This document shows positions 11,236 through 44,959 of a DNA stretch of 64,000 nt, in pieces. The DNA is taken from NCBI RefSeq assembly GCF_963676685.1, contig NC_092348.1:8866001-8930000 (forward strand), given 5' to 3'. Position 1 is the stretch's first letter, and every line of letters starts with the position of its first letter. Source of the DNA: Mytilus edulis (Eukaryota). Both the position numbers and the translations under genes were made by a program. The notes under the pieces were generated by a model that saw only the letters and a program-made list of their open reading frames with translations, did not search any database and was not told where the DNA came from.

Positions 11236-11508
11236 NNNNNNNNNNNNNNNNNNNNNNNNNNNNNNNNNNNNNNNNNNNNNNNNNNNNNNNNNNNNNNNNN
11301 NNNNNNNNNNNNNNNNNNNNNNNNNNNNNNNNNNNNNNNNNNNNNNNNNNNNNNNNNNNNNNNNNNNNNNNNNNNNNNNNNNNNNNNNNNNNNNNNNNNN
11401 NNNNNNNNNNNNNNNNNNNNNNNNNNNNNNNNNNNNNNNNNNNNNNNNNNNNNNNNNNNNNNNNNNNNNNNNNNNNNNNNNNNNNNNNNNNNNNNNNNNN
11501 NNNNNNNN
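11236..11508. other. Assembly gap (273 N) preceded by a tattg/tatcg pentamer microsatellite
   Basis: Run of N; the microsatellite is at ~11183-11230. Confidence 0.99.
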
Positions 11509-16651: not shown

Positions 16652-19600
16652 CTAAGGAAGATGTTTGTATATAAAATTACATATTATTTTAAGTAACTCA
16701 ACATTTTCTACACTAAATAACCAGATAATTTTGCTTTGACTGTTCATATGATTAAAATAAGAATTATATTGTGCAATACTAGCTAACATACAATTTCTAT
16801 CATCCTCAAATTTGTTACAATCAAATAGAAAATGAGCCTCATCTTCGACAGTATTGGAAGAACATTTATTACATATTCTGTTAATTCGGGGAATACCCTG
16901 ATATCTACCAAAATTCTATTTGTAATCTATGAGAAGATACACGTAATTTAGTAAAACTTCTTCTAAGTTCAAAATTCTTGATCAATGTTAGATATTTTTC
17001 AAAACCAAAATTTGTTTTATATAAAAGGTAGGTTTTCAGTTTAATTACTGTCTGAAAATTTATCTATTTGTTTTTTCCAACAGCTAATAAACAATATTGA
17101 TAGCTTGGTTTGTATATATTTCTTAAATTTGTATAAGGATTCACAAAATGGAGCATTTATGGCATTTGTATAGTCAATACCAAGTATTTTAAAAACAACA
17201 TTTATTGAACCATACCATGATGTTATATTCATGTGATGTAGTGTCTTTGATTGTGTATATGCCTCTTTTAATAGAGGAAAATTATTACCTAAATTCTCTA
17301 ATCTATACCAGTACAATAACATTCCTTTTATAATATTAAAATATATTGGAAATCTTCCAAGTTCAGATAACACTGCAGCATTTGTTGTTTTCTTGTGTAC
17401 CCCAAGTATAAATTTACAAAATTTTATATGAAGTTTCTCACAGGGTAAACCTGAATATAATTTTTCAAAAGATATATCTTCCTTCTTACATTTAGAGGAA
17501 AGAGAATTAAACATCCCCCATATTTCGCTACCATATAATAAAATAGGTTTTACAGTGTGGTCAAAAACATGAATACTTGTTTTTACATCAGGATTAAGTG
17601 ATAAAAGATCTTTCCTTAATTTGAAATGAGCTTTCAGGGATTTTTTGTATAGTTCATTTTGAGCATAACTGAATGAACCAGATGAGCTTAAATATAAACC
17701 TAGGTATTTGTATTTTGAAACACATTCCAGATTTATATTCTGAAATGTGAATATCTGTTTTACATGTCTGCCTGCCTTGTTGAAAATCAGCACCTTTGTC
17801 TTATTAGTATTCACATTGAGACCCCAATCTTTGCAAAATTTATCAAGCATTCCCAGCTTTTCTCGTAGTCCTTCAGCTGATGTAGATAATAAAACAATAT
17901 CATCAGCATACATTAAACAATGTAGATCTTTGTCATTGACATTAACTGGGTCTCTAGTATCTGACAAATATCTGGGCAAATCATTTATGAATATCTTGAA
18001 TAAATTCGGACTGAGGTTGTCACCTTGTTTGACTCCAATATCTAATGGGAAAAAATCACTTACTTGATTTTGAATTTTGACACATGATTTGCTAATTTCA
18101 TACATACTTTTAATAATGTTATAAAAATAAGACCCAGCCCCAATATCTAGTAGTTTAATCTTGATCCCTGTATGTATAACAGTATCAAAAGCCTTCTGAA
18201 AATCAACAAAACAGGCAAACAGTCTACCTTCTTTTGAATTACAGTATTTGTTAATAAGACAGTTTAAAATAAACATATGATCTGCAGTTCTGGCTTTCCT
18301 TGTGAATCCAATTTGACTATCATGTATAATATTATGTTCCTGAAGAAATTTGTCCAGTCTTAGACTTAATATTCTATTAAAAAGCTTTCCAATTGCACTT
18401 GTTATTGTTATTCCTCTATAATTGTTAGGGTCACTTGTATCGTTGCTTTTAAAAATTGGTGTAATATAACCTTCAGTCCAAGATGTTGGGTATATACCTG
18501 AAGACAGACAAGTATTAAACATCTGTTGAAACTTTTTAAAAGGAAAGTCTGTCCATTCTTTATCATATTATTACTAATGTTATCCAAGCCTGATGATTTA
18601 TTGCATTTTAAGTGTGAAATGGCTTTGGATATTTCAGACTCAGTGATAAAGGAGTCCAACTCGTTGAAACATTTTGAGTTTTCTAACTGTTTCAGTTTTT
18701 CACATAGCTCTGTATATCTACTTTGAAATTCACCTTTCAGTTGTGACAACTTTTGGAAATGTGATATCAAAGTTGATGGTTGTACTCCACATTTTTTTTA
18801 GTTTCATTTTTTTCCTGTAGTTCATTAATTAAGTTCCAATACAGTTTTGGATTCTCTTCGTGCAAGGAGTCCAGCTGACTAATCAATGATTGTTTGTATT
18901 GTTTGTATTTATATTTCCTTAGTTTGGAGTATTCACGATTCAGTTTATAAAAGTGATTTTTGATAATTGGATCATATGGAAATCTTGAATAAATTTTTCC
19001 ATAATTAAGCAAGTTAGTTCGAGCTTGTTGTAAACTTGCGTCAAACCACTTTTTGTTTTTTTGTTTGTTTGTGTGTTTTTTTAAAGGTCGTTTAAGTGAT
19101 AGATTTGCTGCTGATAAAAAGATGTTTGAAAGTTTTGATGATGCGTCATCTACTGATGTCTGAGTAAATTGAATTGTGCTGTTGTTGAATTCTAGTATGT
19201 AGTTTTGTAGTGTATCTGAAGAAAGTGTTTCTTGAAATTTTATTGCTGAACAGTCAGTCCAGACATAATTAGGTGTCATATTTTTCAACTGGATTGGAAT
19301 ATCATTTTCTCCAGGAACACAATATTTTGCAGATAATTCCCACTCAAGTTTACAATGACAATCAGATAATGTGGGAATAAATCTGGATACTTTAAAATAC
19401 AGTACATTTTCAAGAATTTCTTCCGACACAGCAACATAATCAACCACACTTGCACCATTGGGGGTATAGCAAGTAAAATTACCAAATGTATCACCAAGAA
19501 CTCTGCCATTTAAAATTCTTATTTGTTTACTAATGCAAAAATCCAAAACTTCTTTGCCTCTTTGATCAATTTTTTGGTCTCGACTTTTTCTTGTCATAAT

Positions 19601-20179
19601 GTTTTTGTCAGTAGGGTATGTATCAAAAATTGGAGTAAATTTTGAATCATCGTTTACTATAAAGTCATTTTCAGAGCCTATTCTGGCATTAAAATCTCCA
19701 CATAACAAAATTTCACCCATTTTTTTATACTGAAAGATATCTTTTTCTATGCATTCAAAAACATCAGAAGAGAGTTCTTGGGTATATTTAGACGTAACAG
19801 GGGGGTTGTACAGTACACAAATAAATAGGTCACTTTTAAATCCAAAAAAGGATTTTTCTAATTTAATCCATTGATAATCTGGATTACTGTTAATCAATAA
19901 TTTGACATGAGGTTTAACGTGACTTTTCTGTAGAATTGCTATACCCCCAAAATGACGGTTATTATTTGATAATTTTCTACATATTGGATGATAATGAAAT
20001 TTGCCAATATTGTGTATTTGGGAATTATATCCCACATGAGTTTCGACTAAAAAAACAATGTCGTAATTCTCTATATGTTTCAGAAAAAGGGGATCCTCTG
20101 CTTTATTCATGCCCTTTGAAAATAAGCCACCTATATTCCAATAACCAAATTTTACAGATGATTGGTTTGATTTTGGCAT
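16652..20179 (-). pseudogene. LINE ORF2 (APE endonuclease, reverse transcriptase, CCHC zinc knuckle), frameshifted
   Basis: APE motifs WNIGG, LVETH, GDFNAR, VDY and SDH. RT motifs NYRGI, FVDFQKAFD, QGDNLSP, YADD and YKYLG. The C-terminal RICNKC...EDEAHFLFDC lies beyond the ORF track. Frameshifts near 18790, 18530, 17040 and 16920; stop at 16652-16654. Confidence 0.93.
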
Positions 20180-28769: not shown

Positions 28770-29728
28770 ATGGCGCGAAGAAGTTTAACGGGATGTTCAT
28801 TATTGATTAGAGCTGCCCCTTGGGTCATTGTTTTATTTTGCCATTTTGTTCTGGCGGGAAAATATGAATGGATGAAACGTGATAATTTTGACATTATTGA
28901 TGATTTGTTTCAAGCAGTAAAAGGATCAAATTGTCGAAGTAAATCAAAACGGGAAATGTTGCTTCTCCCAGATGTAGTGTCGCAAATACCAAAGGCAAAT
29001 CAGTTGAAAAGTACAATTATCTATAAAAATAGAACAAATCTTGTTCACATGCATAATATGGCTTTAAATCGAGCTTATTTCATGAGTTACATTTTACAGA
29101 AGATGAATGACACCGAGTTATTTTACCAACAACCAAATATTCATTATCTATATATGTCCGTAACTGCTGATATGAACGCCAACCCAAGCAATATAAACGG
29201 AAGTTCTATAGTCTTTGACAACAATTGTTATTATCCAAATTGGTTCGTTACTCTTGATTTCAACAACACAATACCATTATTTGGCGTCAAAGGTTGGCGT
29301 TGGGATGACACATATGACCAAGATAATTATTTACGCGAGCCTACACGCCGAGCGGCATATGTAACGGACATTGGAGCTGGTACAAATAAAAACTATACTA
29401 CGGATGGTTATAAAATGAACCCGTGGTACAACTTCTGGTTACCTGATACTGACAGTGCATTGGATAAAAGTAAAAAGTTTACATTTGGTGTAGGAATAAA
29501 GTATTCAAATGTCACAGGAGAGTTTATTAATAATCATTTCGACAATTTTAACTTCTTTGGACCTAACTTACCAAAACAACAAAACTCGGACGATACGTTA
29601 TTGCCAGTTCGCTTCACACAGCCCTATTTCGATTGTCGTGGATCTAAGAAATGGAAAGTTAGTGCTGTGGCTCCAATAGTGGATTTTATGCCAAGATATT
29701 CTAACTGGACACATTTAAGGAGACAGAG
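28770..29728 (+). CDS. Gene A coding exon 1: signal peptide and first GPR158/179-like Cache domain
   Basis: Acceptor ttttcag ending at 28738, ATG at 28770, hydrophobic AAPWVIVLFCHFVLA, motifs NPWY..W and FTQPYFDC...WKVSAVAPI. Donor gttagt at 29729 (phase 2). Confidence 0.9.
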
Positions 29729-30639
29729 GTTAGTTTTTATCGTTCGTATTTAAACTTCATTGTAACAACAGAATAAAAGTTTTTGTTTAGTGAGAAATGG
29801 ACTATTTTCAATTTCTAACTTATGATAATAGAAACTAGAAGTTAATGGTAATTTATAATAGGTAAACTGTCAATGAGAAAGCAACTAAAAAACAATAGTT
29901 CACCATAATTAGCCATCTAGAAATCGCAACACGTTTTCAGCGTTGACTGCCAAGACTATTTAGTAAGCTCTAAATCGTCCATAGTCCATACAAACGATGG
30001 GAATAAACTTAACGATCAGTGTATAACAAAGACCAAATAACGTACATTAATTATCACACAATTCTAATAATCATATAAATATCAAAACTTATAGCAAGTG
30101 ATAATTGTTGACGAATACTACGACCTTTGCATATTTTTTTTAAATTGCATAGTGAGAACGATTTAAAGCACAATAGAAATCAAATTGAAAAATGGTTTCA
30201 ATTATATCGGTACAACCTAAAAATGACCAAACTATCCAAAAGTTACAAAAGATAAATAAAACCACATCAAAGAATGTTGTTTTAAAAATCGTAAAATAAA
30301 AAGTTCAACTAGATTCAGAAGATTTATCTAAAGTCGATGTGCAAGTTCACAAATAACATAAGCCCCGAAGAGCTTTTGAATCCATTACATTTATATAAGG
30401 CGGAAATACATATAGAATAAACAATACAAATAGTACAAGGACGATTACATATATTGACATACAAGGTTATAAAACAGCACACCTTTTAAAAACAGATAAG
30501 CTTAATAAAACAGCTAATTTTTCATTTCTTTAAAAAAAACACTAATACCCTTAAAATCTTTATAATGTGATATATTTAAGCCTAAATGTCAGGACTCATT
30601 AGTTATGCATTTTAATTAACATTCATATTTGTTTTCCAG

Positions 30640-30769
30640 AATAGTTGGCGTTATTGTCATTGATACAGATTTTCAAGAGATTGACTTTAATGCCTGTGGT
30701 ACCAGTCCTGGTAACCCTGGACCCAGTTTTCTGTCCGGCATTTCAAGATGTAAAGGGCCTTCTACAGGG
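30640..30769 (+). CDS. Gene A coding exon 2 (IVGVIVIDTDFQEIDFNAC...SRCKGPSTG)
   Basis: ttccag acceptor and gtaaaa donor, phases 2/0. Paralogous to exon 5. Confidence 0.88.
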
Positions 30770-31544
30770 GTAAAATTCTACCTTTTAAAGCTTAGTTGTA
30801 ACATTTACATTACAAATTAATGCGTATGAATATGGCCTTATTTATTTGTATTTGTCAGGCCCAGTTCTTCTGGGTGTCCAAGTAATTTTATTTACTATTC
30901 ATAAACGTTCCGTGTTCAATTTGTGACTTTTATCTTCTAACAGTGATTTCTCTGAAAAATCAACATCAAATCATAGCTCTTTAAACTTATATTATGTAAT
31001 TGTGCTTTGAAGAAGCGGTTGGATTATGTTTATGTTTAAATGATTTGATCCTTAATTTCTTATGGATGTGTACGATAAAGATAAGGACATTTTCTAGTAT
31101 TCAATAAAACCAATGCTTTATGAAATCTTTAAAAATTTGAGTTATCTTTCTCTGTCCAGAATAGTAGTTGAATCAACTTAAATTAATACTAAATACAATA
31201 TACATTCAGTGATTACAAGCACTTTGATTATCATTCTAAGGTTATGCCCTTTTACAAATGGAAAAATGGAAGAATTATTTAGTATCTTAAGTTTGTCTTA
31301 ACTAAATTGAGTGAAATGTGTATATAATGCTTATTACCTCTAAACTCTTTAAGTTCAATTTTTGGCAGCTTCACTTTTACAGTTCTTGATTTATGTCCCT
31401 TTATAACGTTGTATGCTAGCGGGGGCATCGTCACCTGACCATGACTGTATGCCATTTTACATTTTAATATATTATGATGTATTTAAATGAGTAGTTATAT
31501 AATTATTGTTGCAAACTCCATTAGAATTTTGAAATGAGATCATT

Positions 31545-31885
31545 TTTGTACGACCGCAAAAATTGAATTTTTTTTGGTCGTATATTGGTATCACGTTGGC
31601 GTCATCGTCGTCCTCCGAAGACATTTGGTTTTCGCACTCTAACTAAAGTAAAAGTAAATAGAAATCTATGAAATTTAAACACAAGGTTAATGACCATAAA
31701 AGGAAGGTTGGGATTGATTTTGGGTGTTTTGGTCTCAACAGTTTAGGAATTAGGGGCCAAAAAGGGCCCAACTAAGCATTTTTCTTGGTTTTCGCACAAT
31801 AACTTACGTTTTAGTAAATAGAAATCTATGATATTTTAAAATAGGTCTATGAGCACAAAAGGAAGGTTGGGATTGATTTTGGTAG
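31545..31885 (-). mobile_element. Truncated HINE-like element of a second family with a ~160-bp satellite-like core
   Basis: T run, hairpin tacgacc...ggtcgta, gtc microsatellite, then a core repeated at ~31628 and ~31787 (ggttttcgcac...aaggaaggttgggattgattttgg). Confidence 0.6.
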
Positions 31886-33963
31886 TATTCAATTAAAAAA
31901 TAGGATTGTTACTAAATACATAATTATGTAATACGAATAGACAAATAAGTACCATTGACCTATTACTAATTAAGAAATGTATGTTAATTTTTTTTTTTTT
32001 ATAGTAATACTAAATAACATGCCTCTTCTCCAATTAGAATAACAATTCTTATCTTGAAAGAAAAACGAAACTGATAAATTTTCCTGTCTTAGTATGAAAG
32101 GGTTGTAGGTTAGAGAAATGCTTCAACATATTTAAACATGTTGGTCTGGCAAAAAATCAACGGGTTTAACAAGGTTGGCAAGTGTTGTAGACCAATTTGA
32201 ACCCTGAGTTTTAAAGTTGTGTTTTATGAACTATAAGTTAGTGTCTATTTTTCTCTTCTCTTTGGGTTATGTTATATCTATCTCCGAAAAACAAATTCTG
32301 CCTGATTGGTATGCTGTTACTTTGGAGGTGTTTTTATCTAATTATGTTCAAATTATATTATGATAATTCTAACGAAAATATACATAGTGCACATTGATGC
32401 AACAGCAATATCAGAAAAAAAATTAATTGGTAAAATCAAAAACATTAAGATCGCATTTTTCACATATGGCATGATATGTTATCCACGTTCTGAAAATTAG
32501 CATATAGTATGTCTATAAATTACTAAAACGGTTGTCGTTTTAAGTTAAATTTCTTTGACATAAAGCGAATATTCAAAGACGTTAAGGGATGAAATGCATG
32601 AAGCTGTTGCAATACGAATAACTGAAGATGTGTTAATGAAACAGGAACCCAAAGACAAAAATAACAAAAAGACACATATAGTCAAGTTCTTTTAAATGTT
32701 CCGAGTCTATAAAAGATGACAATACATTCAACATGTTCAATAGAAACTATCAGAGATCAACCATCAACCAAAAATTCTTCAGGAAACCCATAAAAACCAT
32801 CAAGATATGACATGAGACAATCATTGATGAGATATCTTTTTTAGAACAGGCCCATGTATATTAGATATTCACATTTACATTCCTTATTATGTTAGTCAAT
32901 CTAAAGTGTGTCATACCATTTCAAATGCATTGTAGACGATGCTATATATTTTTCAAAATTATTTGCATTAAAGATAGAAGTTCCTGAAACACAAATAAAA
33001 CCCTTAATCCTCTAGATTTCATGTATTTGGCCTCCAAAATTGTCAGTCTTGTCTGTAGTCGTAAAAGTGATTCCAGACACACGTGCAAGTTGTATTAAAA
33101 TCGACATCATTAAATAATGTTGCATCTATTGCGAAAAAAACAGAGGATAAATTTGGTTGAAATAGAAATTAATGCATTGGTTTTTCGAACCTGTTGTATT
33201 CACACCTTTCAATAGTAAAATTAATGCAGATCGCATAGCACAACTCTCAAATAACAGACATGTCCAAATACCAAAAGTCTAAATAAAGGCGACAGTAGTA
33301 TACCGGTGTTCAAAGGTAACAAATTAATTGAGAGTAAACTAATCCGGGCCACAAACCAAACGCGAGGAAACACATCAACTATAAGAGGAAAACAAAGGAA
33401 CACCGAAGTGCAACAACAATAAACGCCAGGATGGACACATAAACGAACTATTTAATAACAACTGCCATATATTTACTTGGTACAGGTTATTTATAGAAAA
33501 TATGATAGGTTGAACCTGGTTTAATGGCATGCCAAACCTCCCGCTTTATGAAAAAGTAAAAAAAAATATTACTAAACACTACTTGACAGAAATACAGTAC
33601 AAACAAATTATATACAAGTCGACACAACATGGAAACTGCAGAACATCGAACATATTCCATCAACGGTAAACACCACAAGATAACTAAAACAGTGCCGCGC
33701 TTACGTACGTAACCAACATGCAATCTCGAACTTTTTACAATTATTTTCACAATATTCATCCAAACTAACCATTTTCAATCCGCCTTTCAACTAGTCATCT
33801 TTTGATTTTCAAATGTGTATTTATAGTTAAAACATAATATAGGCTACGGTGTAGACCTGGGGATATGTTGTCATTGTCAAGGTCTGATTTTAGTGTAAAC
33901 ACAAGATTGGCTATGCGCGTAGACGAGGAGGATATGTTTGTCATTGTCAATGTCTGATTTCAG

Positions 33964-34129
33964 TGTAAACATAAGATGGGTTATGGCCGAAGACGTGGAG
34001 GATATGTTTGTCATTGTAAGAATCCATATCGGTATCCAAGATGGATATCTCCCCCATTCCAAGGTGATGACGTAGAAAGAGCAACTGATGAAGAATACAA
34101 GAATAACTTTGAATGTGTGAAAGATGGAC
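33964..34129 (+). CDS. Gene A coding exon 3, EGF-like (CKHKMGYGRRRGGYVCHC...FEC)
   Basis: tttcag acceptor and gtaagt donor, phases 0/1. Paralogous to exon 6. Confidence 0.88.
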
Positions 34130-35381
34130 GTAAGTTTTTCAAAAATATTTTTAATCATAATTAAGAGTTTGTTTTTTTTTAAATTGTGGTTGCACCAGTC
34201 GGTGACAACATTTGATTTTTGCAGATGTTTGTTTGAAAGAAAAGATTTTTTTAAATAGTTTATGATATTTCACCCAAATCTTTTTATGCCAATGTATATA
34301 CAGGTAGGCAATAATAATGTTTGATAAAATTAATATCAAACTTGTTTAAAAGAGGGACGAAAGATACCAGAGGGACAGTCAAACTCATAAATTGAAAATA
34401 AACTGACAACGCAATAGCTTAAAATGAAGAAGACAGACAGACAAACAATAGTACACATGACAGAACATAGAAAACCAAAGAATAAGCAACACAAACCCCT
34501 TGAACGATAATTTTCTGTTTATTATCCGCTTAAGATATCGTGTAACATTTTAGGTGGATATATTGTATCAACATCGGTCTTAATTTCAGATATATATATA
34601 TATATATATATCAAATATATAAATATAAATAAAAAGATGTGGTATGAGTGCCAATGAGACAACTCTCAATCCAAGTCACAAAGTATAAAAGTAAAAAATT
34701 ATAGGTCGAAGTACGGCCTTCAACACTGAGCATTGGCTCACACCGAACAGCAAGGTATAAAGGGCACCAACATGACTAGTGTAATCTTTTCATACGGGAA
34801 AACCAACGGTCTTCTCCATATATTAAAAAAACGAGAAACGCGCATGAACTACACTAACATCTTTATTTGCAGATAAAACAGATTAAAATTTTAGACATTT
34901 AAAAGATAGCAAATTGAAAATAAATATCTTGCATTTGATAGATATGATTATTGCCTTTACATTCTTCTGAAAAATAGAAAGTAATATTAATCCTGGTTGT
35001 TTATGTTCGGACAAAGGACAGAACTTTTTACGATACAAATTTCCAACCACCTTAATACTCAGTGTAGAAATAATATCCCTTCAAAAATATTTTCGATTTG
35101 CATTACGTCCTAATCGTGGGCTGTTATGGAGAAAGTTATAAATTATCATAAACTTATTTCACTTTTAACGATTTTAACTTTTGTTGAGTTTGTTCCATCG
35201 TGGGCTCTTTAAAAGTTGTGCCAATTCAGACCAAGACCAATGACACTTGGTGGTAAAAAAACTGTTTAATTATTTCAACATTTTATACATAGTAAATTTA
35301 CAAGAAGTGAACACATCAATGACATACATTTTCAGGAAATTGAGTCAATTTCTTACTATAAACTATATTAAATAATTTTAG

Positions 35382-36402
35382 AACTTGGAGTACTTCCCAT
35401 TGTCGACAAGACAGAGCAAGTAGTCGTAGAGTTTGGCGTAGGAGATATTAACGTCAGAAGAAGAAGATCAGAAAACTACTTAAACGGGTCTGAACCAAAT
35501 GTTATAAAAAGTCGATCGTTAAAATCCATTAATGTGGACGATGACACGGTTAACAAATATTCAGAAAAAGCACAAAAAAAGTTTGAAAAAAGACAACAAA
35601 AAGAAAAGCTATCGCCAATCCATTTAGAAGATAAGTTACGAAAAAGGAGAAAGAGAACGGTGAATAGTGGTGAGAGATCCGAATTTGATCAGATGAGGTT
35701 TGAAAAAATGATCAGGATTTTCCGTCAGAAAGCCAGTATCAATAAGGTGAGCTGTAGAACTTCAGCACCAAGTCTATTACATCTACCAGGAGACGTTGCC
35801 TATGGCGTTGACAGACAATTTGATTACCAAGGAAGAACAGCACTTAGACTAGCCCACTTTTTGAGTAATTTCTTACAAAATGTTCAAGCTAGCGACAACT
35901 TTGGTAATTTAAGGGGTGGTGGACGATTGCACATGGAACAAATGTTTGGAGAGGTTATTGCCAACGTTATGGCTGATCATAAAATTCTTTCTTGTGGGCT
36001 TTATTTCGAACCATACACCTTTGAAAACCAAGATGGTTCCAAAAGAGAAATGTTTGGTCCCTTTGCTTACATGCAAGATGGACGAGCTCTTGCCCTTGAT
36101 ACTGCTGGCAATCCCAGAAAATACATTTATGAAGATTTTTATGTTAAGATGAAAGCTAACTGGAAAACCAACTTTGAACACTTACAAACGTATAAGATGA
36201 GACCAATGGTAAGATACGATCCTGCTGGGACCAGTCAGATTCGATTTGAATACTTCCCTATGCGATACAAGGCACCAGATTATAACGATGGACAATGGTC
36301 ACATCCATATTTTAGATGTGATGGAATGGTGGATGAGTGGATCATGACATATTCTGCTCCATTCTTTAAAAAGAACTACATCTCAAATAAAATAGAATTC
36401 GC
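35382..36402 (+). CDS. Gene A coding exon 4: linker with furin-type sites and second Cache domain
   Basis: ttttag acceptor in frame with ORF 35534-36406. Contains RRRR and RKRRKR, and WSHPYFRCDG..DEWIMTYSAPFF. gtaagt donor, phases 1/2. Confidence 0.9.
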
Positions 36403-37498
36403 GTAAGTATGAAACCAAAGTTACATCCAAACAATTATATGTTAATTATATGAGTACATCACAACGATGGCCAGTATAGTTGGACAATTAGTTATAATAG
36501 AAATACCGACTGTCTGTTGAAATATCAATCCACCAAACTCAACAAATATGCTGTCGATCAAAACGTCGGGTATTTTGATATTATTATATTTTGGTGTGGT
36601 TGATTTTGAAATCAATGAGTTTATTGTTTGCAGAAATAGTTATGTTTGATGATGTTTGATGATACTATGAATCCCATCTTTCAATTTAGTATTTGGGAAT
36701 AATGGTTTAATGCACAGAAAAACCAAAAGTATTGATATTATTGCAAATTGCAAAAAATAAATTGGTTGTCTTGAAGATTTTGCAGTACTTTAGTAGAACT
36801 TTAAAATATTAACCAAATTCGGGAGTGTTCCTTCTTACAGTATTTCTGCATGTCACATTTACTGTAAAAAGCTTAGCGAGTTGGTAATAGCTTTGGAATT
36901 TAAATACTTGAGGGTAAATGTCTTTTACTCCCTTCTGTGCTTGAAAATGTTGGATGCAATAGATTTGGTGTAGTTCAATAGTGAAGAACTGGTTTTTTTG
37001 TGTGTACAAATTTGGGAAGGAAATATGTAATGAAACAACGGACAGTGTTTTCTAAACGTATATTATATACATTGTTATAATTTATTGTGGTTTCATGGTA
37101 TATTCTAAGAATTTATATACCCAATGAGAGGGCGGTATATACAATGACTATAACCGTTCTTTTGCCATTTTAATGTTCGGTCTTGAACTTTATTATGTTG
37201 AAATTTTAGATCTACCAGACAGTCAATAATTGATTCTTATCATATATTTGTCAACGTGTTATTAAGATTATGGTCTATTTTGCATGACATCGTGTTAAAT
37301 ATTTTTATATGGTTTTCCTATTCAAACAATTAAGTAATGTACATTATATAAAATTTATATCTACAAACCAAACTATTTGAAATAAAAAAACTTACTTAAA
37401 AAATGATAAACTTATTTACTTAAATATTTAGGCAAACAATTCAAAGCTTAATAACACAATGTTTACATTGTAAATGCATGTCGTGTTTCTTGTTACAG

Positions 37499-37616
37499 AG
37501 GAGTTATAACAGTAGACGTACCACTAGACAAACTCGAAGTAAACCAGTGTCCACAACCATTCAATGTTGCCAACGCATTCAAAAATACAGCTAGATGCCA
37601 TACAAAGTCTACAAAG
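37499..37616 (+). CDS. Gene A coding exon 5 (GVITVDVPLDKLEVNQC...FKNTARCHTKSTK)
   Basis: ttacag acceptor and gtaaaa donor, phases 2/0. Matches the GPR158-type GV..VD....dinQC..F..T..C pattern. Confidence 0.9.
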
Positions 37617-37869
37617 GTAAAATATTTCTCTTTAATATATTTGCTAAATTTAATTAACGCTTTGTAGTAAATATAAGAAGTTAATTGGTTGCGTATTTTA
37701 CAGGAGTGATTTGGTTGTTTATAAACATTATTGGCGTAGCAGTCGTTCGTAATGTGCCGAACACTACTTTTGCCTGTACCAAGGCCAGGAATATGACAGT
37801 TTTGTTGCCGTTTGTTCCCTTGGTTGATATAGTCTAGCGTTTAATTTTGTTAGTTTCTATGGTCGTCTC

Positions 37870-38279
37870 TTCTTGCCACAAAACCAGGTTCAACCCGCCA
37901 TTTTTTTCTTTAAAAATGTCATGTACCAAGTCAGGAATATGGCCATTGTTATATTATAGTTCGTTTCTGTATGTGTTACATTTTAACGTTGCGTCGTTTG
38001 TTTTCTTTTATTTTTTAGTGTAAATTCACATTGCGATAAGACGTGTCACGGTACTTGTCTATCCCAAATTCATGTATTTGGTTTTGATGTTATATTTGTT
38101 ATTCTCGTGGGATTTTGTCTGTTGCTTGGTCCGTTTCTGTGTGTGTTACATTGTAGTGGTGTGTCGTTGTTCTCCTCTTATATTTAATGCGTTTCCCTCA
38201 GTTTTAGTTTTTTACCCCGATTATGTTTTTTGTCCATGGATTTATGAGTTTGAACATCAGTATACTACTGTTGCCTTTA
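37870..38279 (-). repeat. Interspersed repeat (aaaggcaacagtagtatac family)
   Basis: Related copies at 33284-33640 (+), 46810-47048 (-), 63880-64000 (+) and 12350-12560 (partial). Confidence 0.7.
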
Positions 38280-39185
38280 CTTGAACTTACATTGGAGTTT
38301 GTTAATATTGTTTAGTATGGAAATTAATTCAAGACAAATAGAAATATAAAATATTCGGTAGCTTTGAAATATCACTGAGAGCAAAATCTGTAATCTCTGA
38401 TTTTTATGACGTTAGGTTCATTCACATCTATTCTACATTATATGTCAATGCGAAACTTCATATCTTATTCCCTGTTAGAATTTCAACTCCCTATAGTCGT
38501 TAGACGAAGTCGATATAGGGTACAGCCTTGAAATATTTATGTCATCTGTGAAGTCGATTTGTTTTTATCTTAATACTGGAGTACCCTAAAATAAAACATA
38601 AAACATTAATCATCGCATTGGTCTTCTTTTATGTCAACAGGGATATAGTCCTGTCAATGTAGGTAACAAATCAAATTGCATGCTTAACCGGAATATATCA
38701 CTCCCTTTTGTCAAGCAGATAGAAAATGGACAAACATCATGCATTGACTTTGGTGATCTCAAATGTTAGCGGTTATTGAAGTGAAGACAAATATGCTAAT
38801 AAGGGTATTGTACACATAATGGACAGAGAATTTTTTTTTAAAATGCCACAATTATTCATTAGTTCAAAATAGTGCATACTTCTATTTGTTTTCCGTACAA
38901 TTTATAAACTAACCTTATGTGTTCCTTTGATGTATATGTTAATGTATGGGAATTAGAAAAGTCCAACTCGTTAATCCAGATTAAAGCTAACGTTCTATAT
39001 TGATTTTCAAAGCAAAAAGGACGACTTAACGTTTACGCAAAGTCAGATTTGATGAACGGATTGTTTTAGTTTCTGTTAGCTGTATAATTAACCTATCTAG
39101 TTATCAACAAATATATGAAGGAAATGTTTTAAGATATAATTGATAATTTTAATATATCTCACATATATCTGAATCTGTTTTACAG

Positions 39186-39340
39186 TGTAAACCACAAGCA
39201 GGCTTCAAGTTTTCGCGTGGAGCATACCGATGTGATTGCAAACAAGGACACGAGTATCAAATTAGAGACGGTAAATTCTGGATTGAAGGTTCTCTCATTG
39301 AACTTGAGTATGAAAAGAAACAAAAGAAACTGTTTAGCAG
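39186..39340 (+). CDS. Gene A coding exon 6, EGF-like (CKPQAGFKFSRGAYRCDCKQG...)
   Basis: ttttacag acceptor and gtatgt donor, phases 0/2. Confidence 0.9.
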
Positions 39341-40990
39341 GTATGTGCAAAAGAAAAATAAGAAGATTTTGTAAATCCCTGAAATTACAAATGTAACACA
39401 TCTCAAACAATAAAATAAATGGCCTTAATTATAAAAAAACAATAATAAACAAAACGGAAAACCACTGAATTACTTGTTTAAAAACAAAGATCTAAATACG
39501 AAAAATGAACAAGTAAGATGATATCTATACACCAAAAAGGAAAATGGAAATTTGATTTAAAAAGGAGAAGGCAAAATGTAAATTGGTTACGTTTTAGAAA
39601 CAGACTGTTGGATGGAGAGTTATCTTAATGGCACTTATAACATATCTTCTTATATCTATGTAGCTCCTATTTAAAAAGCAACAGTTTGTAAAATATCTAC
39701 AGACATAATTAGGATCAACGCTAAAAGTTGCAATCATGATCAGGTAGGAACACAAAATCTGGTGTTGTATTTCCAGACACTGTACATACGACATGATTCG
39801 ATAGCGCATACCACGTTTTCTGGAATTAACCTTGTCAGATACGCCGGATACCAAATTTTTCAGAAGCCAAAATATAAAATGTTGAAGAGCAAAATTCTAT
39901 ATAACCCAAACAATCCAAAATTAATCTGCATATAAGGCTTTCTTGGCCTAAATACTCGGAATCTTGCCGACAAACAGTCCTAGCTATTAAGCGAGTAGCA
40001 TATAAATGTTCTGTTAATTACAGTAATGTTTTAGTGACAGTAAAGTCATACGTTCGCATCAAACCAAATGACACAAAATCAGATATACAGATTATATTCA
40101 TTCAACGTGTCCGATTCCCGAAGCTTTATATTAAGACAGCGTCAGAAAAAACCCGAATTTTTATACTTTGACATTCAAGTGTTATTGCATGGTAAACTAC
40201 ACCTGTCACATTTCCAGGTATCAGGGTTTGAACTACTAGTATATCCGAACAAAGAACGATAAGCCTAAAGAAATATATCTATATTTGTGAAATACCTTTT
40301 ACGTGACGGTTCGTAAACTCACTAATGCAGCCATACAATTTCAGTTGTGTTAAAACAAATTCAAACAAGTTACAGCGTTGTAACAGTATTGTGTTGTGAC
40401 AATAATCGTATATTTACAAATTATTCACGAAACTCGACACAAAGCTTCATCTAGAAATCTAACATGGGACGCCGGAAAGTGATTACCTACTAATTTTTTG
40501 TTTTGTTAATGCATGTACTATCAACTTATGCATATACTACTGATCCAATACGGGTGTTGCTGATATATATTTTAGAAATTAAAAATATCTTAGAGGCAAC
40601 AGTACTATACCGATGACTAAATCTCTTATCTAAGTTAGGAATACACAAATCAAGATAAAAAGCCCAGCAAATATGAGGGAACCGCATGAACTACAAACGA
40701 AGCGAGAACAGTTGTGTAGACCTGGTAAATAAAGGCAACAGTTGTACACAGCTGTAATCTGTTCAACAGTAGATATGAATAAAAACAAATTTACAGAAAG
40801 ATGAACAATGTTAGCACAAATATACACGAAACAAGCCCCAATATATTCACACTACATTCACAACGGATTGAAGAATCTGAAATGATTGTTTAGTCTTCTA
40901 AAATAATTGATACAAACATGTTCTGTCGATTAGTTTTTTCATACAGACATCTGAACAATTTCAAATTGTTTAAAACGTTTTATATTTCAG

Positions 40991-41096
40991 ATTTGACCAG
41001 TTAATCTGTCGAGTATCTGCAGCTCCTAGAGCCGTGGGATCATTTACTACGGCATTCGTAGTTACTATATATAGTCTTGTAATGCTACACTTGTGA
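40991..41096 (+). CDS. Gene A last coding exon with a GPI-anchor-like signal (FDQLICRVSAAPRAVGSFTTAFVVTIYSLVMLHL*)
   Basis: tttcag acceptor with compatible phase 2. Supplies the closing Cys. Joined CDS is 2655 nt = 884 aa plus stop. Confidence 0.82.
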
Positions 41097-41499
41097 GGCA
41101 TCCAACGAAAAGTGCTAAGTTAAAAACTATGCAAAGACATAATAGTTACTATGGCAACATTGTTATACACAAATGTGTAGTGAAACTTAAAATCGTTAAA
41201 AGAAAACTAAACTATTGAAGACAAGAGATATGATGATGTAGACAGTGATTTAATCTAACTTTGTTTAATATTTGCAGCTGACATAATAACAAATATTTTC
41301 ATTGTACATATATTAACATATTCATATCACAAAAAAACTTGTATAGTCATGCATGTGTACTTATTTTAATTGCATCAGATAGTTACATCTACTGCTTGAT
41401 TTATAGTGACCATCATCACCTGCTCGTTTTGTGCTTTATTGTATACATAACTTTCTAATAACGATTGTTTGCATCTCACAAATAATTTCCAACCATCTG

Positions 41500-43495
41500 C
41501 ACCGTGTAGAACGCCACATGCGGGGTGTCGGCTATGTTTGACATGGGGTGGCAATTTTGAAGCGACGAAAAAGTAACAAGGTAAGTTCAAGCATCAAAAT
41601 TTCTCATTTCTAAAAACTCTCAGTACCATATAATGTATTGCACGGAAGGAACCGCAACATAATCTATTTCCTGAAAGCAGAAGCAGTCGTTTTCAGTGCT
41701 CAGTTTTCTCAAACAACTCGCCCTAGTTTTCCGTGTTGCAGATTCTGAGGCTTTATATGCAAATTTCGGTATAAAAAACTACTTTACACAGCCATCAACC
41801 GTATCATTTATATAGAATTGTATTCCTCTCATTGACTTATACCAAATACCAGTTTCTTAGTTAAAATTAATTGGTTTTAAAACTGTTATTCATCAAAATA
41901 TAAAGTGTCGCTCGGGGTGTCAGATTTTGCGTCGCAAGGGGTAGAGGCTTGTCATAAAAAATAATATTAGTCTTCATATGATACATTTTATTTCAAACAC
42001 ATCTACTTTACTATGACAAAACAAGGATTTTTCATTTTGCCTGTTTTTGGTCTTATAAAATATATGCTTTTGATTTCATTCACATCTACTTTACCATGAC
42101 AAAGTAAGGGTTTTTCATTTTGCCTGTTTTTGGTCTTATAATAGTTATCAAAGGTACCAGGATTATAATTTAGTACGCCAGACGCGCGTTTCGTATACAT
42201 AAGACTCATCAGTGACGCTCATATCAAAATATTTATAAAGCCAAACAAGTACAAAGTTGAAGAGCATTGATGATCCAAATTCCAAAAAGTTGTGCCAAAT
42301 ATATCTAAGGTAATCTATGCCTGGGTTAAGAAAATCGTTAGTTTTTCGAAAACATGTGCTTTTGATTTCATTCATAGTAAAAATGGCTTAAAATATTTAG
42401 TTTTCAAGCTGGTAAACGATTTCTTTTCCTTTTCAGTCACTATCATGGTAAAAAAGTCAAGGCTATGGCTCAATAAACCAAAACATCATAAAATAGTCCT
42501 CAATATAAGATATGCCCGAAGCCTCCACCAGCCAAAATGCATCATAGTTCATCACCAGGTTCATCTAAAAAGCACTCGTGCACGCCGCAAAAATCCATTA
42601 CTCCTAAAGAATTAGAACACTCTCTTCAATGAAACACTCGCCGGCATCTTTTTCAGCGAATGACAACACAACTTCAAGTAATCCTGAAGACGATGATACT
42701 ACAATTGTCAATGAGAAAACAACGACTTGTACACAAATATACAACGGAACAGGTTTACAATAAAAAATGATTTAAGACAGTTATTTCGTTCGTAATCGCC
42801 CAGCTAGAATTATCCGTTTTCTGTTACACATCTATCATTTCATATCTACTTTGAAGGTCTACTCTGACTATATACATATCTCTAAATGAACCGGAATTGA
42901 ATAAAATTTGAAGAATTTGATGTAACCTGTGTTTTTCTAGGTTAAATTTCTGTTACATTTATGTTCATATTTGTGTAGGTGTGTTTGAATTTAAAAAGTA
43001 TCAGATAGAGATCGATTTATAAGAAAATGTATTCTTTTTTTATGACAAGCCTCTACCCCTTGCGACGCAAAATCTGACACCCCGAGCGACACTTTATATT
43101 TTGATGAATAACAGTTGTAAAACCAATTAATTTTAACTAAGAAACTGGTATTTGGTATAAGTCAATGAGAGGAATAAAATTCTATATAAACGATACGGGG
43201 GATGGCTGTGTAAAGTAGTTTTTATACCGAAATTTGCATATAAAGCCTCAAAATCTGCAACACGGAAAACTAGGGCGAGGTGTTTGAGAAAACTGAGCAC
43301 TGAAAACGACTGCTTCTGCTTTCAGGAAATATATTATGTTGAGGTTCCTTCCGTGCAATACATTATATGGTACTGAGAGTTCTAGAAATAAGAAATTTTG
43401 ATGCTTGAACTTACCTTGTTACTTTTTCGTCGCTTCAAAATTGCCACCCCATGTCAAACATAGCCGACACCCCGCAAGTGGCGTTCTACACGGTG
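41500..43495. mobile_element. Non-autonomous DNA transposon with ~460-bp TIRs, CACCGTG termini and a 5-bp TSD (Transib/RAG-type signature)
   Basis: 41500-41961 is the near-perfect reverse complement of ~43036-43495. TSD atctg at 41495-41499 and 43496-43500. The element itself is well supported; the superfamily is inferred from termini and TSD. Confidence 0.88.
42174..42218 (-). ncRNA. Type I hammerhead ribozyme motif in a retrozyme fragment (~42141-42348)
   Basis: Minus strand reads gcgtca-CTGATGA-gtc-ttatgta-tac-GAAA-cgcgcg-TC-tggcgta. The core is intact, with one stem II mismatch. Confidence 0.85.
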
Positions 43496-44959
43496 ATCTG
43501 TTAAACCTAATGATATCGTGCTACAAACTTCATTTTAAGGGTTTCCGAAAGCAAATAATCAACTTTGCTATTTGTGTTCAAATATGAGCTCAGGTATAAA
43601 TTTTTCTGTTCTTTCTGAACTGTTTTTTTCTTTTTGTAGAGTAAATGAATCTGAAATAATAATATACTTTGTGACGCCTTGCCTTACGTGGCCTTCTTTT
43701 GTTGCATGTTTGTTTTTAACGTTGATTTTACTTTAAAAGACAAGTCCTTTTTGAGAGGTTAAGAGATGAGTTTAACGATCTACAAGGACAGGAGCAAATG
43801 TTTCTAGTAAAACAATGTATTTTAATGAACACCCGCATTGAATCAAATTCGAAACGTAGAATTCATACATCTGTTAATTTTGATTGTGTATTTTACCATT
43901 ATGTAGACTGTCCCTGTCTTTTTTTTTGCATTTGCGATTGATATATTAAATGAAATAAATAAAAACAACTAATTGGAATCATACAAATCATACAAATATT
44001 TTGACCGGAATGTATATTTTTTCATTACTCGGTATCACCAATATTTTGTCCTTTAATTTGGGAATAATAATCATAGATTTTTTTCTTTCAGGTAATATTT
44101 AGTTATCAGGAATAGTTTATGTTTGTAAATATAAAACTGTATTATATGTAAATATGATGCTGTATATTATTTATACCTTTGCTAATGATTATTATAATAT
44201 TTTTTTAAGAATGAATATAAATTTATTATAAAAATTAATATTTTTGATTTTCTGCATTAATTCAAATAATTCTCAAAGCAACTAGTCCCGTCAAATATTA
44301 TAATTGATAATCGGAAATAGTACAGAAAAATAATTTTGACATCACCTCATCTAAAATAGTCCTTTCGTGTCTTTTGACATATGAGTTAAGACAGTATTAG
44401 TTTATTGATGTGCAAACCGCATAAAACAATTGAGTAATTGAAGTTCAAGGAAACAACAAAATCTGTGGGAATTACATGAACGTTTCAAAAGGAGCAAGCG
44501 CTGTTTCTTATCTGTTGTGTGTGTGTGTGTTTTGTTGTTGTGTAATAACAAATTTTGTGTCATGAATGGATACTCCACACCCTTTTTTTCTATTTAGACC
44601 AAGTATGTCGACCGGGTAATGCTTTCTTGCTATACATAAATCGCTCCGTCAAAATGTCACTCACAGGAATAGGACACCATCGATAGATTTATGAATATAA
44701 ATCTGTGATTTTAAGTAAGATACTGCTAACGGAGTCTGTATAGTGTGCATATACAAGAGTTTGTAATGTAATTGTAATTGAGAGGGTATGTAACTGCTGA
44801 TAAATGGTAATTTGAAAATATCAGGTTTGTACAAACCTCTCTCAAATTGTTTGCTAATAAATCTATAAATTATCAAGTAATTAAGGTAAAACTCCCTCAG
44901 GAAAAGTTGCGTTTGGTTAGATTTGGCAACATTGTTTTTAGTGTCTTTTTTTCCATAAA

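What the first reader, a model, noticed from the sequence alone, without database searches (positions are those of the whole stretch)
28770..41096. A 'receptor without a receptor': GPI-type protein made of two GPR158/179-like ectodomains and no 7TM
Seen: seven phase-compatible exons give 884 aa with a signal peptide, [Cache-like + Cys/EGF-like] x2, and a C-terminal S-A-A, spacer and hydrophobic tail directly before the stop. Known: the PYFxC..W...sAP / GV..vD....nqC / C....G.....GxYxCxC pattern is the GPR158/GPR179 ectodomain, and the GPR158 Cache domain binds glycine. Tandem Cache domains, proteolytic cleavage and a GPI anchor also describe calcium-channel alpha2delta subunits. Inference: a surface-tethered amino-acid sensor, co-receptor or decoy, of interest in an animal that likely uses glycine/taurine as osmolytes. 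Uncharacterised orthologues may already exist in other invertebrates.
Basis: partly seen in the sequence, partly recalled or inferred. Interest (0 to 1): 0.82.

Follow-up and report, generated by a model that had tools for sequence, protein, structure and literature searches.

The report
GPI-tethered double GPR158-like ectodomain protein
A mussel gene, confirmed by RNA, encodes an 884-residue surface protein made of two copies of the sensor part of the glycine receptor GPR158, with a predicted lipid anchor in place of the membrane-spanning receptor part; it belongs to an old, widespread and unstudied invertebrate family.

Summary
Seven GT/AG exons (28770-41096, + strand) give 2655 nt, or 884 aa.

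- **RNA support:** Their overhangs read the end of E3. The stop lies in E7.
- **No 7TM:** there are no 7TM exons in the window, and the nearest 7tm_3 hit is more than 0.5 Mb away.
- **Two modules:** each module is a Cache domain plus a GPR158_179_EC Cys-rich stalk. This rests on Pfam hits on a 97%-identical Mytilus trossulus protein, profile-profile comparison, AlphaFold models and fold searches. The two modules are ancient duplicates with the same intron positions.
- **C-terminus:** the end (Cys-Arg-Val-Ser-Ala-Ala, spacer, 16 hydrophobic residues, stop) is a classical GPI signal. It is conserved in orthologues from molluscs, annelids, flatworms, tardigrades, insects, crustaceans and a nematomorph.
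- **New here:** a furin-type site is conserved in the inter-module linker. A complex prediction also places the two Cache domains against each other through the helices that form the GPR158/179 homodimer interface.

The ligand is unknown, and amino-acid sensing is untested. Orthologues are annotated only as "uncharacterized", and I found no paper on the family.

The parts
28770..29728 (+). Exon 1: start codon, signal-peptide-like N-terminus (MARRS + hydrophobic run ...VLAG), Cache domain of module 1 up to PYFDC...SAVAP; 7 N-x-S/T sequons
   Evidence: homologues; AlphaFold model; Cache-only hit list (3lic Z 9.8, GPR158 Z 5.8 over 153 aa); hhalign against module 2 E 3.6e-22
30640..30769 (+). Exon 2: last Cache strand (IVGVIVIDTD) and the first two Cys of the Cys-rich stalk of module 1
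   Evidence: weak PF22572 hit; colinear with Saccostrea/Candidula proteins that hit PF22572 at about 7e-19
33964..34129 (+). Exon 3: EGF-like part of module 1 (CKHKMGYGRRRGGYVCHC...) and stalk end (...EEYKNNFEC)
   Evidence: its last 30 nt are the overhang of RNA contigs at the E4 acceptor
35382..36402 (+). Exon 4: about 100-aa disordered, charged inter-module linker, then the Cache domain of module 2
   Evidence: PF22673 6e-8; 3lic Z 10.4; GPR179 Foldseek prob 0.99; GPR158 Z 6.6
35639..35656 (+). Furin-type site RKRRKR in the linker, about 62 residues before the ALRLAHF helix. A second site, RRRR, lies at 35456-35467
   Evidence: an R-x-[KR]-R motif lies 58-70 residues before the same helix in Octopus, Biomphalaria, Argopecten, Pecten, Gigantopelta, Solemya and Schistosoma orthologues. 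Cleavage itself is inferred
37499..37616 (+). Exon 5: last Cache strand (GVITVDVP) and the first Cys pair of the stalk of module 2
   Evidence: joints in 4 of 4 runs
39186..39340 (+). Exon 6: EGF-like part of module 2 (CKPQAGFKFSRGAYRCDC...) and stalk
40991..41096 (+). Exon 7: stalk Cys (41007-41009); candidate omega site S-A-A (41016-41024); spacer PRAVGSF (41025-41045); 16-residue hydrophobic tail (41046-41093); stop TGA (41094-41096)
   Evidence: joint 39340>40991 in 4 of 4 runs; same tail pattern in orthologues
41097..41299 (+). 3' UTR, at least to the end of the stretch laid; contigs run on 78 to 784 nt further
   Evidence: table 8

Best explanation
This is an expressed mussel gene for an 884-aa secretory-pathway glycoprotein. 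The protein consists of two diverged copies of the GPR158/GPR179 ectodomain, each a Cache domain followed by a Cys-rich EGF-like stalk. A long disordered linker joins the copies, and the protein ends in a GPI-attachment signal instead of a 7TM domain.

The proposed mechanism has four parts.
1. The protein is tethered to the outer leaflet. The lipid anchor is added 2-3 residues after the stalk cysteine, at the point where the GPCR relatives continue into their last Cys knot and TM1.
2. The two Cache domains pack against each other through their two long N-terminal helices. This gives an intramolecular pseudo-dimer that mimics the homodimeric ectodomain of GPR158/179.
3. A proprotein convertase probably cuts the linker, so that module 1 stays non-covalently bound to the GPI-anchored module 2.
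4. Having no intracellular part, the protein can only act as a ligand-binding subunit. That means a co-receptor for a cis partner, a sink or decoy, or a matrix or trans-cellular organiser.

Shown: the transcript structure, the domain identity, the absence of 7TM, and the conservation across protostomes. Inferred: the GPI attachment, the cleavage, the pseudo-dimer and any ligand.
For: - **Gene model and RNA joints:**
- **Independent identical model:** the 884-aa protein of Mytilus trossulus (P0284) is about 97% identical overall (82-98% by exon) and has 2x PF22572 (E 1.4e-41) plus PF22673.
- **Module-2 orthologues match solved structures:** they align to solved GPR158/GPR179 chains at 4e-10 to 9e-9.
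- **Module-1 orthologues:** they hit PF22572 at about 7e-19.
- **Modules are homologous to each other:** hhalign prob 99.5, E 3.6e-22 over 315 columns, and the intron positions and phases are identical.
- **Fold:** both Cache exons give hit lists made almost purely of Cache/PDC sensors, including GPR158/179.
- **No 7TM:** the stop lies in E7. The nearest 7tm_3 hits are C5:7.74 Mb and a weak one at 9.45 Mb, against the window at 8.87-8.93 Mb. None of the 120 best family members listed carries PF00003.
- **GPI-type end across the family:** of 119 members of at least 780 aa, 107 have a hydrophobic C-terminal tail, 111 have an N-terminal hydrophobic region, and only 1 has an internal TM-like segment.
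- **Paralogues:** all 4 loci in this genome pair an E1-type exon with an E4-type exon.
- **Furin-type site:** positionally conserved.
- **Pseudo-dimer:** Complex prediction on E1(30-319) against E4(98-339) scored 0.80, with the best of 3 controls at 0.00. This mark was reached by 51 of 78 solved complexes and 2 of 108 mismatched pairs. The runs agree in at least 71% of contacts, and the partner's pLDDT is at least 62. The interface lies mainly on E1 89-138 and E4 145-198, the long helices. PMC11437087 names these same elements (alpha-I and alpha-II) as the GPR179/mGlyR dimer interface.
Against: - No GPI predictor or experiment was available. A 16-residue tail that contains T, Y, S and H could be a short C-terminal membrane anchor instead.
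- The complex score may come from the model's memory of solved GPR158/179 homodimers. In that case it shows likeness, not binding.
- Interface residues are only slightly more conserved than the rest (p = 0.07 and 0.015).
- The AlphaFold models are of middling confidence (pLDDT 67-69).
- The furin motif is missing or displaced in the tardigrade, shrimp and copepod orthologues.
- The E1>E2>E3 joints were not seen directly in RNA.
- Contigs show only the dominant isoform.
Confidence: 0.7

Rival explanations
1. Same protein, but the hydrophobic C-terminus stays as a tail-less single-pass membrane anchor (type I), not a GPI anchor.
For: Some orthologues end with a few charged residues after the hydrophobic run (…ILRRH, …MLRPAVQR, …NLSRD). 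No GPI predictor could be run.
Against: The tail is only about 16 residues and ends at the stop codon. Small residues (S/G/A x2-3) precede it at a fixed distance after a conserved Cys-Arg, followed by a 5-10 residue spacer. This is the classical omega, spacer, tail layout, and it is conserved from flatworms to insects. Type I proteins normally have a tail of 20 or more residues and a cytoplasmic stop-transfer segment.
Confidence: 0.15
2. Functionally it is a glycine/taurine (amino-acid) sensor like mGlyR/GPR158.
For: Both modules have Cache folds with the conserved PYFxC and V-D strands. The GPR158 Cache domain binds glycine and taurine (stated in PMC12834959 and PMC11437087).
Against: GPR179, about 40% identical to GPR158 in the ectodomain, does not respond to glycine. 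Its pocket differs, and its Cache domain binds the matrix protein pikachurin (PMC11437087). The modules here are at most 29% identical to a GPR158-like GPCR ectodomain. Pocket residues could not be mapped, because the primary paper is not held.
Confidence: 0.2
3. It is a decoy or heterodimer partner that pairs in cis with the ectodomain of the GPR158-like GPCRs encoded elsewhere in the genome.
For: The genome has several GPR158-like GPCR genes: C3:60.83 Mb, a cluster at C3:36.7 Mb, and C5:9.45-9.50 Mb. Cache-Cache dimerisation is the family's habit (PMC11437087).
Against: The predicted intramolecular module 1 to module 2 interface uses exactly the helices that would be needed for such pairing. 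The tandem form is conserved in all four paralogues and across phyla. This suggests a self-sufficient pair.
Confidence: 0.12
4. The model is wrong: it is two adjacent genes, or the 5' part of a GPCR gene whose 7TM exons lie further on.
For: Several database models of other species split the locus into two proteins, for example Batillaria BaRGS_017864/017865 and Bulinus Btru_030619/030631.
Against: RNA contigs of 2.5-3.0 kb run from upstream of E4 through E7, with the E3 overhang at the E4 acceptor. The stop lies in E7. There is no 7tm_3 hit within 0.5 Mb. Full-length single-gene models of 800-1000 aa exist in dozens of species.
Confidence: 0.02

Closest known systems
GPR158 (mGlyR) and GPR179, class C orphan GPCRs
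   Same: Each module has the same ectodomain: an N-terminal Cache domain followed by the Cys-rich, EGF-like GPR158_179_EC domain (PF22572). The motifs are conserved (PYFxC..W, GV..VD....QC, GxYxCxC). The predicted Cache-Cache packing uses the same helices as their homodimer.
   Different: There is no 7TM domain, no cytoplasmic RGS7-binding tail, and no distal part of the stalk (CPEGC..C). There are two diverged ectodomains in one chain, not one. The protein is predicted to carry a GPI anchor. The family is known so far only in protostomes.
Calcium-channel alpha2delta subunits and CACHD1
   Same: These are extracellular, Cache-containing proteins that are membrane-tethered at the extreme C-terminus (GPI in alpha2delta) and proteolytically processed into two associated parts. 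They resemble the protein here in fold at Cache level (8x90_B Z 5.1-6.5; 8s7c_A Z 4.3).
   Different: No VWA domain is present (Pfam finds none). The Cache domains are of the GPR158 type, each followed by an EGF-like stalk, not dCache_1 inserted around a VWA. There is no sequence relationship beyond the fold.
SmGBP, the truncated metabotropic glutamate receptor of Schistosoma mansoni (PMC3206071)
   Same: It is a precedent for a class C receptor ectodomain that exists as a membrane-associated, ligand-binding surface protein without the heptahelical domain.
   Different: SmGBP is a Venus-flytrap (ANF) module, single rather than tandem, with no Cache or EGF-like stalk. It is lineage-restricted, whereas this family is pan-protostome.
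'GPR158/179 extracellular domain-containing protein' entries (automatic UniProt/NCBI names), e.g. Mytilus trossulus LOC134722188, Octopus bimaculoides XP_014776491.1
   Same: They are the same family and architecture. The Mytilus trossulus entry is the orthologue, with 884 aa and about 97% identity.
   Different: Nothing differs structurally. These entries are uncharacterised predictions without a published description.

Membership tests
GPR158/GPR179 receptors (class C GPCR) | Extracellular Cache domain | tested here: met
   PF22673 on exon 4 (6e-8). AlphaFold models of both Cache exons give Cache-only fold lists that include GPR158/179.
GPR158/GPR179 receptors (class C GPCR) | GPR158_179_EC Cys-rich/EGF-like domain (PF22572) | tested here: met
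   Two copies in the 97%-identical orthologue P0284 (E 1.4e-41). On the window's own exons the hits are only weak and partial, because the domain is split over three exons. The joined window protein was not searched, by rule.
GPR158/GPR179 receptors (class C GPCR) | Seven-transmembrane domain (7tm_3, PF00003) | tested here: not met
   The ORF stops in exon 7, and RNA contigs confirm that end. There is no internal hydrophobic segment. No 7tm_3 hit lies in the window or within 0.5 Mb. None of the 120 best relatives carries it.
GPR158/GPR179 receptors (class C GPCR) | Cytoplasmic C-terminus that recruits RGS7-Gbeta5 | tested here: not met
   The protein ends with the hydrophobic tail, so no intracellular sequence exists.
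Protostome tandem GPR158/179-ectodomain family (uncharacterised) | Signal peptide, two Cache + PF22572 modules, 800-1000 aa, C-terminal CR-small-small + hydrophobic tail | tested here: met
GPI-anchored proteins | N-terminal signal peptide, and a C-terminal omega site of small residues, a spacer of 5-10 residues and a hydrophobic tail that ends the protein | tested here: inconclusive
   The sequence pattern is present and conserved (S-A-A, PRAVGSF, 16 hydrophobic residues). No dedicated predictor or biochemical test was available.
alpha2delta / CACHD1 | VWA domain flanked by dCache_1 domains | tested here: not met
   Pfam finds no VWA or VGCC_alpha2 in P0284 or relatives. Only the fold resembles at Cache level.

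The most novel reading that the evidence does not exclude
A pan-protostome family of GPI-tethered, furin-processed single-chain mimics of the dimeric mGlyR/GPR179 ectodomain. The family acts as the ligand-binding subunit of a receptor complex whose signalling partner is a different membrane protein. This would be GFR-alpha-like co-receptor logic for Cache-type class C sensing. It would mean that Cache/EGF ectodomain sensing in animals is not confined to GPCRs.
Probability: 0.25. Interest if true: 0.8.

Novelty: new variant of a known kind. Interest (0 to 1): 0.6.

Why it matters
The Cache plus EGF-like ectodomain is currently described as the hallmark of the mGlyR/GPR179 branch of class C GPCRs (PMC12716839). 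This gene shows that the same ectodomain also exists, duplicated in tandem and without any receptor body. It does so in a conserved family of about 800-1000 aa proteins in molluscs, annelids, nemerteans, flatworms, tardigrades, arthropods and nematomorphs.

The family offers three things:
- A natural soluble or lipid-tethered form of the ectodomain for ligand hunting, with two diverged pockets per molecule.
- A possible single-chain model of the Cache dimer.
- An unstudied surface protein in parasitic flatworms and insects.

The finding is not new as a sequence, because orthologues are already annotated as "uncharacterized protein".

Tried and rejected
- **The joined 884-aa window protein** was not sent to any search or fold tool, by rule. 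I used exon products and the 97%-identical orthologue P0284 instead.
- **Direct BLASTP of exon 1 against exon 4** found nothing significant (E 0.14). Only the profile-profile comparison showed the homology.
- **phmmer of single exons against the PDB** found nothing. The exon-4 profile against the PDB gave only a weak bacterial sensor hit.
- **Foldseek on the exon-1 model** had no hit at E <= 0.001. VIA-align was needed.
- **P0210**, which looked like a GPCR with two ectodomains, has a near-identical internal repeat. It is most likely a model artefact and was dropped as evidence.
- **Mapping the glycine-pocket residues** failed, because the primary paper is not held and the other papers do not list the residues.
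- **Interface-conservation test:** only weak.
- **Literature searches** for a 7TM-less GPR158-like protein found nothing on this family.
- **Earlier scan notes** hold nothing on this family.


Full report
**1. The observation**

The window is AT-rich animal DNA (GC about 0.32). It lies at C5:8866001-8930000 of a 1.37-Gb assembly. On the + strand, seven stop-free segments with canonical GT..AG borders and compatible phases can be joined:

| Exon | Coordinates |
|---|---|
| E1 | 28770-29728 |
| E2 | 30640-30769 |
| E3 | 33964-34129 |
| E4 | 35382-36402 |
| E5 | 37499-37616 |
| E6 | 39186-39340 |
| E7 | 40991-41096 |

Together they give 2655 nt, which is 884 codons plus TGA. E1-E2-E3 and E4-E5-E6 have the same intron positions and phases: phase 2 before the (I/G)V..V.D strand, and phase 0 before the CK... 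exon. The gene therefore contains a duplicated three-exon unit.

**2. Transcription**

- Depth is zero in the introns, apart from a dispersed repeat at about 37700-38300. The runs therefore behave as RNA.
- All four runs show the joints 36402>37499, 37616>39186 and 39340>40991, all GT..AG.
- The overhang in front of 35382 is the last 30 nt of E3 in X5 and X8. Module 1 and module 2 are therefore on one mRNA.
- Single contigs of 3026 nt (X1) and 2550 nt (X8) carry 1343 and 1358 nt upstream of E4. E1-E3 need 1255 nt.
- Those joints rest on the contig lengths and on the independent NCBI model of Mytilus trossulus LOC134722188 (P0284). That model has 884 aa and matches the window exon for exon at 82-98% identity, about 97% overall.
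- No contig joins 39340 to anything else. The stop lies inside the contigs; one run has TAA instead of TGA.

**3. What the protein is**

*Module 2.* Exon 4 alone hits the PDC/Cache model PF22673 (6e-8), and the start of PF22572 (GPR158_179_EC) weakly. The PF22572 domain is split over three exons.
- Gastropod module-2 proteins hit PF22572 at about 1e-23.
- They align to solved GPR158 and GPR179 chains at 4e-10 to 9e-9, over the PYLEC...GAYECICKAGF stretch.

*Module 1.*
- Orthologues from Saccostrea and Candidula hit PF22572 at about 7e-19.
- The 97%-identical P0284 has two PF22572 stretches (1.4e-41) plus PF22673 and nothing else.
- Exon 1 and exon 4 are not detectably similar by BLASTP. Profiles of their homologues, however, align over 315 columns with probability 99.5%, E 3.6e-22. 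The two modules are ancient duplicates.

*Fold.*
- The AlphaFold models of the two Cache exons have pLDDT 69 and 67. The first ~97 residues of exon 4 are disordered.
- Both models give VIA-align lists made almost entirely of Cache/PDC sensor domains.
- Exon 1: best hit 3lic Z 9.8, human GPR158 Z 5.8 over 153 residues.
- Exon 4: best hit 3lic Z 10.4, GPR158 Z 6.6.
- Foldseek on the exon-4 model: GPR179 prob 0.99, GPR158 prob 0.97.

**4. No receptor body**

The ORF ends in E7. Across the family there is essentially no internal hydrophobic segment: 1 of 119 members of at least 780 aa has one. A genome-wide 7tm_3 scan finds the nearest hits on the same chromosome at 7.74 Mb and, weakly, at 9.45 Mb. 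The window lies at 8.87-8.93 Mb.

The 9.45-9.50 Mb hits belong to a separate GPR158-like GPCR gene on the opposite strand. More such genes lie on C3. The genome therefore holds both true receptors and this receptor-less form.

Module 2 is closer to a GPCR ectodomain (29% identity, 3e-30) than module 1 is (8e-16). The alignment shows the stalk conserved up to a Cys. After that Cys the GPCR continues with CPEGC..C and TM1, whereas here the omega site follows within 2-3 residues.

**5. The C-terminus**

The window ends ...FDQLICRV-SAA-PRAVGSF-TTAFVVTIYSLVMLHL-stop. The same layout appears in many orthologues: (F/Y)xxLxCR, then 2-3 small residues, a short spacer, and a hydrophobic run to the end.
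- Molluscs: Octopus, Pecten and Argopecten, Biomphalaria.
- Flatworms: Schistosoma, Macrostomum.
- Other protostomes: a tardigrade, shrimps, a copepod and a nematomorph.
- Among 119 long family members, 107 have the hydrophobic tail and 111 have an N-terminal hydrophobic region.

This is the classical GPI signal, and I rate GPI attachment at about 0.8 against a tail-less TM anchor. It remains a prediction.

**6. Family and distribution**

- The genome has four loci. Each has an E1-type and an E4-type exon on the same strand, 3-6 kb apart. They match the four Mytilus paralogues in NCBI.
- Full-length relatives of 800-1000 aa, all with PF22572 and none with PF00003 among the 120 listed, occur in bivalves, gastropods, cephalopods, annelids, a nemertean, flatworms, tardigrades, insects, crustaceans and a nematomorph.
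- The ESM Atlas cluster has 1026 members, mostly arthropods.
- All carry automatic names: "uncharacterized protein", "GPR158/179 extracellular domain-containing protein", and a few misnamed "Fras1 related" or "GPR179".
- I found no paper on them.
- Current reviews describe the Cache/EGF module as a feature of mGlyR/GPR179 GPCRs (PMC12716839).
- A conceptual precedent is SmGBP, a 7TM-less Venus-flytrap glutamate-binding protein of Schistosoma (PMC3206071).

**7.

*(a) A conserved cleavage site.* The inter-module linker carries RKRRKR (35639-35656). An R-x-[KR]-R motif sits 58-70 residues before the conserved ALRLAHF helix in mollusc and Schistosoma orthologues. It is absent or displaced in the tardigrade, shrimp and copepod. 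This suggests convertase cleavage.

*(b) A predicted pseudo-dimer.* complex prediction placed the Cache part of exon 1 against that of exon 4.
- The score was 0.80, with the best of 3 controls at 0.00. This mark was reached by 51 of 78 solved complexes and 2 of 108 mismatched pairs.
- The runs agree in at least 71% of contacts, and the partner's pLDDT is at least 62.
- The interface is mainly the two long helices of each domain. PMC11437087 describes these elements as the GPR179/mGlyR dimer interface.
- Homodimers of relatives are solved, so the pass may reflect memory of them. It shows likeness, not proof.
- Interface residues are only marginally more conserved than the rest.

**8. Mechanism and limits**

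My reading is a lipid-tethered, probably cleaved, intramolecular pseudo-dimer of two Cache/EGF modules. It reproduces the dimeric ectodomain of GPR158/179 at the cell surface and must work through binding alone.

The ligand is open. GPR158 binds glycine and taurine. GPR179, about 40% identical to it, does not respond to glycine and binds pikachurin instead (PMC11437087). Ligand transfer to modules at 29% identity or less is therefore not justified. The alpha2delta parallel is an analogy, since there is no VWA domain.

**9. Verdict**

It is ordinary as a database entry, because an orthologue is annotated. As a protein architecture it is undescribed, and it is broadly conserved. I rate it as a new variant of a known kind, of moderate to high interest.

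The joined spliced protein was deliberately not searched.

Noticed in passing
window 33861-34017: A 70-bp tandem repeat (2.3 copies, 88% match) spans the intron 2/exon 3 border. It duplicates the acceptor site and the first 46 nt of exon 3. Use of the upstream copy's acceptor (exon starting at 33894) would read CKHKIGYARRRGGYVCHCQCLISV and then hit a stop. That would give a truncated protein with module 1 only.
   Followed up: partly
window about 37700-38300 (intron 5): A dispersed repeat is very abundant in all four RNA-type runs, with summed contig depth in the thousands and many different loose ends. It is not part of the gene's mRNA.
   Followed up: no
window 17041-20179, - strand: Two long ORFs of a non-LTR retrotransposon: reverse transcriptase (PF00078, 4e-34) and an endonuclease/exonuclease/phosphatase domain (PF03372, 2e-12).
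   Followed up: partly
window 41299 onward: One RNA contig (X8, 1185 nt) runs 784 nt beyond 41299, and another (X1) only 78 nt. If the longer one is contiguous, the 3' UTR would enter the 2-kb element that another note places at 41495-43500.
   Followed up: no
window 41095: One run (X5) has G>A in the stop codon (TGA to TAA). The stop is kept.
   Followed up: no
G000 C5:9451256-9497801 (- strand); C3:60827530-60842881; C3:36.67-36.75 Mb: These are genuine GPR158-like GPCR genes (Cache, EC and 7TM exons) in the same genome. One lies 0.5 Mb from the window on the opposite strand, and there is a multi-copy cluster on C3.
   Followed up: partly
G000 C5:49545328-49551487, C5:49570931-49574707, C10:49193423-49197466: Three paralogous loci have the same tandem exon pair. 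Two of them lie 25 kb apart.
   Followed up: partly
protein P0210 (MetaClust, 874 aa): This GPR158-like GPCR entry has residues about 200-339 repeated almost letter for letter at 389-527. It is probably an assembly or model artefact, not a true tandem-ectodomain receptor.
   Followed up: partly
window 11236-11508: A run of 273 N (gap or masked).
   Followed up: no
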